In this document: one piece after another, positions 37,368-37,463 of the stretch
Layout of the letters: every line of letters begins with the position of its first letter
How positions within the stretch are numbered: position 1 is the stretch's first letter
DNA from: Octopus vulgaris
Lineage: Eukaryota
Assembly: GCA_951406725.2 (NCBI GenBank)
Contig: OX597822.1
Coordinates: 67,642,001-67,706,000, forward strand
Length of the DNA stretch: 64,000 nt
Reading direction: 5' to 3'
The notes under the pieces: model-generated
Told to the model about the DNA's origin: nothing
Databases searched by the model: none
Seen by the model: the letters and a program-made list of their open reading frames with translations, nothing else
Translations under genes and position numbers: made by a program

Positions 37368-37463
37368 CAGATTATTTTGGGACAATTGTTTCGCTATTAA
37401 TGAATTAAATGTAATTTTACTTACAAAAAAATCCACTTGTAGCTCGTCAGCCAAAACTATCTG
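37368..37463 (-). ncRNA. Type I hammerhead ribozyme, canonical core, 51-nt stem II domain
   Basis: Minus strand: CAGATAGTTTTGG-CTGACGA-GCTA...TAGC-GAAA-CAATTG-TC|CCAAAATAATCTG; 13-bp stem I with one mismatch and one wobble; palindromic stem III ACAATTGT; predicted cleavage between 37381 and 37380. Confidence 0.85.

What the first reader, a model, noticed from the sequence alone, without database searches (positions are those of the whole stretch)
37368..37463. Best-preserved hammerhead: canonical core and 13-bp stem I
Every core nucleotide matches consensus (C3-A9 CUGACGA, G10.1-C11.1, GAAA, GUC). Stem I has 12 of 13 positions paired (one wobble). Stem III is the palindrome ACAATTGT, suited to dimer folding. 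It sits in a ~430-bp block bounded by (TA)n. It is probably still catalytically competent.
Basis: partly seen in the sequence, partly recalled or inferred. Interest (0 to 1): 0.75.

Follow-up and report, generated by a model that had tools for sequence, protein, structure and literature searches.

The report
Hammerhead ribozyme of a young retrozyme
The flagged bases do carry a complete hammerhead self-cutting RNA motif. It belongs to one truncated copy of a 535-base non-coding mobile element with about 2,460 ribozyme copies in this genome, a known kind of element (an animal "retrozyme" that rides on Penelope-like enzymes) that I did not find reported for cephalopods in the papers searched.

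Summary
The minus strand at 37463-37368 holds a type-I hammerhead with an intact core. Helix I has 13 positions (11 Watson-Crick pairs, 1 G-U, 1 A-A). Helix II is 51 nt and well structured. Helix III is the palindrome ACAAUUGU, which can pair only between two ribozyme copies.

It is not an isolated relic. The roughly 430-bp block is a 5'-truncated copy (about 0.87 unit) of a 533-535-nt non-coding repeat. The 31-nt 3' half of the ribozyme occurs 2,462 times in this 2.8-Gb genome.

Copies sit in (TA)n and form same-variant tandem arrays of up to 13 units. In 20 of 38 loci they carry a head-to-head inverted arm, which is a signature of Penelope-like element (PLE) insertion. Of 59 arm 3' ends, 55 fall on two TA-rich tracts of the unit and none falls at the cleavage site.

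Among 91 ribozyme copies the core varies only at the free position N7.

Public contigs give indirect signs of sense-strand RNA: a closed 565-nt cycle, and 10 A>G sites that no sampled genomic copy carries against 0 such T>C. Cleavage and circles remain unshown. Rfam finds no hammerhead here, and there is no double-sided covariation. No enzyme-coding partner shares sequence with the repeat. A young Neptune-like PLE that also sits in (TA)n is only a candidate.

Verdict: a new member of a known kind. The scan had noted Penelope-type hammerheads elsewhere in this genome, but not this family.

The parts
37368..37463 (-). The complete type-I hammerhead motif, from the helix I 5' strand to the helix I 3' strand.
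   Evidence: The CM built from family variants scores 117 bits here.
37451..37463 (-). Helix I, 5' strand (CAGAUAGUUUUGG).
   Evidence: It pairs with 37368-37380 through 11 Watson-Crick pairs, 1 G-U and 1 A-A.
37444..37450 (-). Core C3-A9, CUGACGA, with N7 = C.
   Evidence: In 91 family copies only N7 varies: C 67, A 18, G 6.
37393..37443 (-). Helix II, 51 nt. It consists of 4 bp (GCUA/UAGC), a 2x2 internal loop, an 8-bp helix, and a 5-bp hairpin with a 6-nt loop.
   Evidence: The four variable pairs all change on one side only, between A-U and G-U.
37389..37392 (-). Core G12-A13-A14 plus A15.1.
   Evidence: Invariant in 91 copies. That sample was partly selected on this segment.
37382..37389 (-). 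Helix III, the palindrome ACAAUUGU. It can pair only between two ribozyme copies (a double hammerhead).
   Evidence: The constrained double-hammerhead dimer folds at -56.6 kcal/mol. The unconstrained dimer folds at -60.4.
37381..37381 (-). C17. The predicted scissile bond lies between 37381 and 37380.
   Evidence: inferred from the hammerhead numbering. Not shown experimentally.
37368..37380 (-). Helix I, 3' strand (CCAAAAUAAUCUG).
   Evidence: Three A>G changes seen in contigs of public run X2 fall here.
37183..37657 (-). One solo, 5'-truncated copy (about 0.87 unit) of the 533-535-nt repeat. It runs from about unit position 525 through unit 1 to unit 425-461. Its 3' end is blurred, because the unit's own TA-rich tract merges into the flanking (TA)n between 37183 and 37221.
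   Evidence: It differs from the family consensus at 8 positions. Three of them are subfamily markers.
37172..37222 (.). (TA)n microsatellite at the element's 3' side. It is the target site.
   Evidence: In the family, 39 of 59 arm ends have flanks that are at least 30% (TA)n.
37658..37695 (.). (TA)n/(TG)n microsatellite at the element's 5' side.

Best explanation
The motif is the self-cleaving hammerhead of a young, non-coding, roughly 535-nt retroelement of the animal "non-LTR retrozyme" kind. The element is mobilised by Penelope-like element (PLE) enzymes. The window holds one solo, 5'-truncated copy.

Proposed cycle, with each step marked as shown or inferred:

1. Tandem arrays are transcribed on the ribozyme-sense strand. 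There are indirect signs only, and the promoter is unknown.
2. Two neighbouring ribozymes pair their palindromic helix III into an 8-bp duplex and each cuts after C17. This gives 533-535-nt RNAs with a 5'-OH and a 2',3'-cyclic phosphate. This step is inferred.
3. The 13-bp helix I holds the two ends together and a tRNA-ligase-type enzyme (RtcB) closes the circle. This step is inferred by analogy.
4. A PLE GIY-YIG endonuclease nicks (TA)n. The freed (TA)n 3' end anneals to one of two TA-rich tracts of the RNA (unit 10-24 or about unit 428-461) and primes reverse transcription. The junction pattern is shown; the mechanism is inferred.
5. Copying round a circle, or along a multimer, gives arrays of 0.07 to 12.75 units, all of one sequence variant. 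The pattern is shown.
6. (TA)n is self-complementary, so the nick on the other strand can prime on the same tracts, or the cDNA can snap back. Either route gives the head-to-head inverted arm. The pattern is shown.

The window copy has an intact ribozyme sequence but no second copy in cis.
For: - Motif: it is complete and beyond chance.
- Fold: the 103-nt ribozyme region has z = -5.3. The 533-nt cleavage-to-cleavage monomer folds at -152 kcal/mol, z = -7.1, with helix I closing the molecule. A double hammerhead is energetically feasible.
- Repeat family: the block has 1,229 first-look candidates at about 99-100% identity. The 31-nt 3' half of the ribozyme occurs 2,462 times, against 0 for the reversed control.
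- Unit: 533-535 nt, GC 32%, no ORF and no tRNA.
- Insertion anatomy in 38 loci: 55 of 59 arm 3' ends lie at unit 20-30 or unit 435-470. None lies at the cleavage site. 5' ends are scattered. 20 of 38 loci are head-to-head.
- Template: arrays, including both inverted arms, carry a single variant each, and different loci carry different variants.
- Core constraint: the core is invariant in 91 copies except at N7, which takes three alleles on at least two backgrounds.
- RNA signs: run X1 gives one flank-free contig of 565 nt, which is 535 + 30, a closed k=31 cycle. Run X2 shows 14 A>G against 1 T>C. Ten of the A>G sites have no G, or one G, in 88-118 genomic copies.
- PLE context: there are over 6,000 GIY-YIG candidates. 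They include a family with an intact 781-aa RT + CX4CxxC + GIY-YIG frame in 16 of 148 scored hits, and all 5 copies examined end in (TA)n.
- Literature: the PLE insertion hallmarks and the (TA)n bias are described in PMC8557442. The retrozyme model is in PMC7229834 and PMC7761336. Dimeric PLE hammerheads are in PMC4209133. Retrozymes as PLE derivatives are in bioRxiv 10.64898/2026.07.22.740005.
Against: - No cleavage, circular RNA or RNA end was observed. Only assembled contigs were available, and the tool merely guessed that the runs were RNA.
- Rfam reports no hammerhead family here, even at E<=10 on 2 kb or E<=5 on 1 kb.
- There is no double-sided covariation, because the family is too young.
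- About half of the copies carry a C.A mismatch in helix I yet form the longest arrays. A perfect helix I is therefore not needed for spread.
- 5' ends show no pile-up at the cleavage site: 1 of 60 lies within 5 nt.
- No sampled RT/GIY-YIG element shares sequence with the unit. The candidate 781-aa PLE has no canonical hammerhead.
- Craig et al. note that hammerheads may simply parasitise PLEs (PMC8557442).
- The sample of loci was partly selected on ribozyme sequence, so invariance of the 3' half says little.
Confidence: 0.75

Rival explanations
1. The element is a PLE-dependent retroposon as described, but the hammerhead no longer acts, or never acted, in its cycle. On this reading the motif is inherited baggage from a PLE terminal repeat, and copies spread from linear read-through transcripts without self-cleavage or circles.
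For: - 5' ends of arms are scattered, and none of 59 3' ends and only 1 of 60 5' ends lies at the cleavage site.
- The subfamily with a C.A mismatch in helix I makes the longest arrays.
- PLE minimal hammerheads cleave poorly in vitro (PMC4209133).
- Naiad PLEs thrive without hammerheads (PMC8557442).
- No cleaved or circular RNA was seen.
Against: - In 91 copies every fixed core base is invariant, while the one free position, N7, changed at least three times.
- All changes in helix II keep pairing.
- Multi-unit arrays of one variant and internal priming sites fit a circular or multimeric template.
- Run X1 gives a flank-free 565-nt closed cycle.
Confidence: 0.15
2. The 535-nt unit is not an independent non-autonomous element. 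It is the terminal repeat (pLTR) of an autonomous PLE that was not sampled. The arrays and solo copies would then be truncated or solo-pLTR products of that element.
For: - Canonical PLEs carry their hammerhead in pLTRs, and retrozymes resemble pLTRs (PMC4209133; bioRxiv 10.64898/2026.07.22.740005).
- Only 150 of 6,136 GIY-YIG candidates were scored and only 35 loci were read.
- One PLE-linked hammerhead (L029) shares the architecture and the base of helix I. The CM match is weak, at E = 0.61.
Against: - Arrays of up to 13 uninterrupted units at about 534-bp spacing contain no ORF.
- blastn with word size 7 finds no similarity to 35 PLE loci.
- The exact 14-nt core plus helix III with a different helix I occurs only 6 times in the genome, against 2 for the control.
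Confidence: 0.07
3. The repeat is a DNA-level phenomenon: a satellite spread by unequal exchange, or a rolling-circle DNA transposon (Helitron-like) that targets A/T sites. The hammerhead-like motif would be irrelevant.
For: - The copies form tandem arrays.
- Insertion is at AT-rich sites without recognisable target-site duplications.
Against: - Roughly a thousand dispersed loci lie on all large contigs.
- The arms are 5'-truncated with fixed 3' ends, and the head-to-head arms have their 3' ends outward, as in PLE insertions (PMC8557442).
- There are no Helitron-type termini.
- The hammerhead core is conserved in the way the ribozyme predicts.
Confidence: 0.03

Closest known systems
Metazoan non-LTR retrozymes (Cervera & de la Pena 2020, PMC7229834; review PMC7761336)
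   Same: - Type-I hammerhead in non-coding, AT-rich tandem repeats, from partial units to large multimers.
- Thousands of copies, as in the mussel (about 5,000).
- A proposed cycle through self-cleaved, ligated circular RNA that is reverse-transcribed into multimers.
   Different: - The unit is 533-535 nt, against the reported 150-450.
- Helix II is 51 nt and helix I is 13 bp, where the canonical sizes are 4 and 6 bp.
- Insertion is strictly in (TA)n with two fixed internal 3' junctions.
- Inverted head-to-head arms are frequent.
- RNA circles are not shown here.
- I found no report for cephalopods in the papers searched.
Minimal hammerheads in the pLTRs of Penelope-like elements, active as dimers (Cervera & de la Pena 2014, PMC4209133; Lunse, Weinberg & Breaker 2017, cited in PMC7761336 but not readable here)
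   Same: - Type-I topology.
- A G10.1-C11.1 pair.
- A short palindromic helix III that can form only between two copies.
- An enlarged helix II.
- Association with PLE-type insertions.
   Different: - There is no unpaired base between A9 and G10.1.
- Helix I is 13 bp, not 4-5.
- The motif was not found inside an RT/GIY-YIG element.
- The family is nearly uniform, not highly variable.
Hammerhead satellites of newts (satellite 2), Schistosoma (Sm-alpha) and cave crickets; double hammerhead of avocado sunblotch viroid (Forster et al. 1988, cited in PMC4209133)
   Same: A tandem repeat that carries one type-I hammerhead per unit. Its weak helix III makes cleavage depend on a two-copy fold.
   Different: Those units are shorter, and their ribozymes have small helices with loop-loop contacts. 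Here the copies are dispersed, microsatellite-targeted insertions with PLE scars, not a classical satellite block.
Neptune and Naiad Penelope-like elements with (TA)n insertion bias (Craig et al. 2021, PMC8557442)
   Same: - Insertion in (TA)n.
- Partial tandems.
- An inverted 5'-truncated copy.
- A short extra "tail" at one end (here unit 1-24).
- A young 781-aa RT + CX4CxxC + GIY-YIG family in this genome shows the same habit.
   Different: The element here encodes nothing. It shares no sequence with that PLE.

Membership tests
Hammerhead ribozyme, type I | Conserved core C3 U4 G5 A6 N7 G8 A9, G12 A13 A14, and a cleavage-site base H17 that is not G | tested here: met
   CUGACGA, GAAA and C17 are read and found by the descriptor. 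They are invariant in 91 copies except at N7.
Hammerhead ribozyme, type I | G10.1-C11.1 and A15.1-U16.1 closing pairs; helices I and II formed; helix I open | tested here: met
   folds; 97.6% of cells paired, against 31-41% when the partners are slid.
Hammerhead ribozyme, type I | Helix III formed | tested here: inconclusive
   A single copy cannot form it, because it is an 8-nt palindrome with no loop. Its minimum-free-energy fold pairs core bases instead. An 8-bp intermolecular helix III in a dimer costs only 3.8 kcal/mol over the unconstrained dimer.
Hammerhead ribozyme, type I | Match to the Rfam hammerhead covariance models at gathering score | tested here: not met
   No hammerhead family is listed at gathering, at E<=10 on 2 kb, or at E<=5 on a tandem dimer. 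The likely cause is the 51-nt helix II and the loop-less helix III. That cause is an inference.
Hammerhead ribozyme, type I | Compensatory (two-sided) base-pair changes | tested here: inconclusive
   There are 0 pairs with changes on both sides and 4 one-sided compatible changes. The family is only about 2-3% diverged.
Hammerhead ribozyme, type I | Site-specific Mg2+-dependent self-cleavage | not testable with these tools
   This needs transcription assays. Only contigs, not raw reads, were on hand.
Metazoan non-LTR retrozyme | Type-I hammerhead once per unit of a short tandem repeat, from dimers to large multimers | tested here: met
   Arrays at 533-535-bp spacing with up to 13 units.
Metazoan non-LTR retrozyme | Non-coding, low GC, no LTR/PBS/PPT | tested here: met
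   GC is 32%. The longest stop-free stretch in a trimer is 87 aa. There is no tRNA and no Rfam gene.
Metazoan non-LTR retrozyme | Monomer size about 150-450 nt | tested here: not met
   The unit is 533-535 nt.
Metazoan non-LTR retrozyme | Expressed as linear and circular unit-length RNA | tested here: inconclusive
   Run X1 gives one flank-free 565-nt contig, which is unit + 30. Run X2 shows an A>G excess on the sense strand. The runs are only guessed to be RNA, and tandem DNA would also give a cycle.
PLE-associated minimal hammerhead | Short palindromic helix III and enlarged helix II | tested here: met
   The same build with unrelated stems is seen next to GIY-YIG loci L024, L028, L029 and L042, and at window 21378-21495.
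PLE-associated minimal hammerhead | Unpaired base between A9 and G10.1; helix I of 4-5 bp | tested here: not met
   A9 is followed directly by G10.1, and helix I has 13 positions.
PLE-associated minimal hammerhead | Located in the terminal repeat of an RT + GIY-YIG element | tested here: not met
   No similarity to 35 sampled PLE loci. The sampling is small (150 of 6,136 candidates scored), so this is weak.
Penelope-like element insertion (integration mode, not coding capacity) | Partial tandems, an adjacent inverted 5'-truncated copy, a short tail at one end, and microsatellite (TA)n bias | tested here: met
   38 loci were analysed. 20 are head-to-head. 55 of 59 3' ends lie at two TA-rich tracts. 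The unit 1-24 tail is present. 39 of 59 flanks are at least 30% (TA)n. The criteria come from PMC8557442.

The most novel reading that the evidence does not exclude
The insertion scars of this family are a genomic record of how animal retrozymes integrate. The template would be a circular (or multimeric) ribozyme RNA, primed internally at its own TA-rich tracts by the self-complementary (TA)n ends that a Neptune-like Penelope endonuclease exposes on both DNA strands. In one event this gives same-variant multi-unit arrays and head-to-head arms. In addition, the sense RNA would be edited by ADAR inside helix I, where inosine would turn the common C.A mismatch into a pair.
Probability: 0.3. Interest if true: 0.65.

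Novelty: new member of a known kind. Interest (0 to 1): 0.45.

Why it matters
Animal retrozymes and Penelope-linked hammerheads are known, but two things are still argued mostly from co-occurrence and sequence kinship: how retrozymes get back into DNA, and which enzymes they use.

This family is young. Copies within a variant are near-identical, and subfamilies differ by about 2-3%. It is abundant, at about 2,460 ribozyme copies. Its insertion junctions can be read base by base. There are two fixed TA-rich 3' junctions, none at the ribozyme cut site. Arrays carry a single variant. Twin arms lie inside a self-complementary microsatellite.

That makes the link between retrozymes and Penelope-like elements, and the circular-template model, directly testable in a cephalopod-sized genome.

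It also shows that the Rfam hammerhead models miss ribozymes with a long helix II, so hammerhead counts based on those models are underestimates.

Tried and rejected
- Rfam search at gathering on the window, at E<=10 on 36500-38500, and at E<=5 on a tandem dimer. No hammerhead family appeared. The only hits were sub-threshold microRNA-like matches on microsatellites, which I take as artefacts.
- ARAGORN search for a tRNA-type head. None found.
- blastn of the block against the rest of the window. No second copy.
- Search for an autonomous partner by sequence. The unit was compared with 30 GIY-YIG loci and 5 full copies of the 781-aa PLE, and nothing was found. The CM R1 gave only a weak hit at L029, E = 0.61.
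- Test for a genomic footprint of cleavage, as a pile-up of arm 5' ends at unit 269. Absent, at 1 of 60 within 5 nt. This is neutral for a circular template.
- Covariation test. No two-sided changes.
- Search for sister families that share the core and helix III but have another helix I. Six hits against 2 for the control, so none.
- Genome-wide search with the CM. It failed twice on the server.
- Look-up of earlier scan notes by sequence and by words. Blank.
- Lunse et al. 2017 could not be read.
- Raw reads were not available, so RNA ends could not be mapped.
- The organism was not identified. "Cephalopod or octopus-like" rests on genome size, contig count and earlier notes only.

Full report
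**Observation**

On the minus strand, 37463-37368 reads as follows:

- helix I 5' strand;
- CUGACGA;
- a 51-nt helix II closed by GCUA/UAGC;
- GAAA;
- ACAAUUGU;
- C;
- helix I 3' strand.

All fixed core bases are present, along with the G10.1-C11.1 pair, the A15.1-U16.1 pair and a C at position 17. Helix I has 11 Watson-Crick pairs, one G-U and one A-A. The predicted cut lies between 37381 and 37380.

A descriptor with these demands finds nothing at helix I 11/13 or better in 200 dinucleotide-preserving shuffles of the window.

The 103-nt stretch folds at -28.3 kcal/mol (z = -5.3). Helix II is a real rod rather than a floppy loop: 4 bp, a 2x2 internal loop, 8 bp, then a 5-bp hairpin.

A single copy cannot form helix III, and its best fold pairs part of the core with helix III bases. 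Two copies can form an 8-bp helix III at -56.6 kcal/mol. The unconstrained dimer folds at -60.4.

Rfam lists no hammerhead family here at any threshold tried.

**What the block is**

The 430-bp block is a repeat in the window's own 2.8-Gb assembly. It has 1,229 first-look candidates, and nearly all of the 40 that were scored are 99-100% identical.

Reading other loci shows a full unit of 533-535 nt. It consists of the 427-nt block plus an AT-rich stretch of about 108 nt.

The 31-nt 3' half of the ribozyme occurs 2,462 times with at most 2 mismatches. The reversed control occurs 0 times. Arrays at about 534-bp spacing reach 13 units.

The unit has 32% GC. It has no ORF (at most 87 stop-free codons in a trimer), no tRNA-like head and no Rfam gene.

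The window copy runs from about unit position 525 through unit 1 to unit 425-461. It is a solo, 5'-truncated copy of about 0.87 unit with one ribozyme, lying between (TA)n tracts.

**Insertion anatomy**

I analysed 38 independent loci (L001-L020, L056-L076).

- Of 59 arm 3' ends, 25 lie at unit 20-30 and 30 lie at unit 435-470. Both are TA-rich tracts of the unit. Four lie elsewhere, and none lies at the cleavage site (unit 268).
- Of 59 flanks, 39 are at least 30% (TA)n.
- The 60 5' ends are scattered. Only one lies within 5 nt of unit 269.
- Arm length runs from 0.07 to 12.75 units.
- Twenty loci carry two arms head to head, with their 3' ends outward.
- Each insertion, including both arms, carries one sequence variant. 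Different loci carry different variants.

Four of these features are the hallmarks listed for Penelope-like elements (PMC8557442): partial tandems, an inverted 5'-truncated copy, a short tail (here unit 1-24), and (TA)n bias.

Because the 3' junctions are internal to the ribozyme-delimited monomer, the template was not a cut linear monomer copied from its end. It was either a circle or a multimer, primed at its TA-rich tracts. (TA)n is self-complementary, so both nicked strands can prime on the same tracts. That would explain the twin arms. This last step is inference.

**Is the ribozyme kept?**

The sample holds 91 ribozyme copies, 23 of them distinct.

- Every fixed core base is invariant. 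N7, the one free core position, is C in 67 copies, A in 18 and G in 6. The A and G alleles occur on at least two backgrounds.
- The four variable pairs of helix II all switch between A-U and G-U.
- Helix I position unit 194 is U (paired) in the window's variant. It is C (a C.A mismatch) in 47 of 91 copies, and those copies include the longest arrays.
- There is no two-sided covariation, because the family is too young.
- Half of the sample was selected on the 3' half of the ribozyme, so only the 5' half counts as unbiased.

**RNA**

Twenty public runs of five coded organisms hold the unit. All are kept as contigs, and the tool only guessed that some are RNA. I laid four runs on a tandem dimer.

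- Run X1 gives a single contig of 565 nt with no flanks. That is 535 + 30, the length expected for a closed cycle at k = 31.
- Run X2 shows 14 A>G against 1 T>C on the ribozyme-sense strand, in clusters.
- Ten of those A>G sites have no G, or one G, in 88-118 genomic copies. Three of them lie in the helix I 3' strand.

This fits ADAR editing of a sense-strand RNA. It lacks matched DNA, and tandem DNA would also assemble as a cycle. No RNA ends could be mapped.

**Partner**

The genome has 6,136 GIY-YIG first-look candidates. In 16 of the 148 scored hits the GIY-YIG match lies in a 781-aa open frame. This protein has an RT domain, a C-x4-C-x2-C linker and a GIY-YIG domain, so it is Neptune-like (the linker is described in PMC8557442).

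The element is about 5.2 kb with 456-bp terminal repeats. All 5 copies examined end in (TA)n, at two alternative 3' ends about 34 nt apart.

It shares no sequence with the unit, and I found no canonical hammerhead in it. It is therefore a candidate on insertion habit only.

Other hammerheads next to GIY-YIG loci share the same build with unrelated stems: a long helix II and an 8-nt palindromic helix III.

**Comparison with what is known**

The kind is known.

- Type-I hammerheads in tandem non-coding repeats are the animal non-LTR retrozymes, with a proposed circular-RNA cycle (PMC7229834, PMC7761336).
- Dimer-dependent hammerheads mark the terminal repeats of Penelope-like elements (PMC4209133).
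- A 2026 preprint derives vertebrate retrozymes from those repeats (10.64898/2026.07.22.740005).

This family differs in four ways: unit size, the very long helices I and II, strict (TA)n targeting with two fixed internal junctions, and invisibility to Rfam.

I found no report for cephalopods in the library searched. The giant squid genome paper lists only Rfam hammerhead counts (PMC6962438).

Earlier notes of this scan describe Penelope-type hammerheads on other DNA of this genome. The look-up by sequence found no note on this family.

**Verdict**

The motif is a real hammerhead and is correctly described. It belongs to a young retrozyme-type element that inserts the Penelope way. Catalysis and circles remain to be shown. 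It is a new member of a known kind.

Noticed in passing
window 21378-21495 (minus strand), with (TA)n at about 21090-21235: A second type-I hammerhead of an unrelated family. It has CUGAAGA, an 11-bp base to a roughly 86-nt helix II, GAAA, the palindromic helix III ACAGCUGU, C17 at 21384, and only about 3 bp of helix I. A long (TA)n lies about 150 nt downstream. ORFs upstream at 23220-24583 gave no Pfam hit at E<=0.01.
   Followed up: partly
L003:1501-2567 (tandem dimer of the family); unit positions 155-156, 273-276, 322, 353, 367-368, 402: Clustered A>G differences appear in contigs of public run X2 (14 A>G against 1 T>C). Ten are at sites with no G, or one G, in 88-118 genomic copies, which looks like ADAR hyper-editing of the sense RNA. 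Unit 273 is the A that faces C194 in the common C.A mismatch of helix I, so inosine there would restore a pair.
   Followed up: partly
L051:1130-6372 (G000:C16:20834929-20840171) and four more copies, L052-L055: A young Penelope-like element of about 5.2 kb with 456-bp terminal repeats. In 16 of 148 scored GIY-YIG hits the match lies in a 781-aa open frame (RT + C-x4-C-x2-C + GIY-YIG), the frame read in this copy. There are roughly 92-nt subrepeats before the 3' repeat, and I found no canonical hammerhead with my descriptor. All 5 copies end in (TA)n.
   Followed up: partly
window 2501-2593 (plus strand) and 34304-34433 (minus strand): Two weaker hammerhead-like matches. The first has CUGAAGA, a 9-bp helix II base, the imperfectly palindromic helix III ACGACCGU and a 5-bp helix I. 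The second has only 2 bp closing helix II. They may be decayed Penelope-type motifs or chance.
   Followed up: no
window 37800-38500, and generally 30000-46000: A dense patchwork of microsatellites: (TA)n, (CA)n, (TACA)n, (ATT)n and (CT)n. These draw many sub-threshold Rfam microRNA matches (mir-297, mir-3149 and others). They are artefacts of simple repeats, not genes.
   Followed up: no
L012:318-352, L057:1291-1299, and loci L060, L066, L067, L007, L065: In about a third of head-to-head insertions the two arms meet at nearly the same unit coordinate. Examples are 424/424, 490/490, 187/202, 258/240 and 222/208, sometimes with overlap. This looks more like snap-back copying of the nascent cDNA than like two independent priming events.
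   Followed up: no
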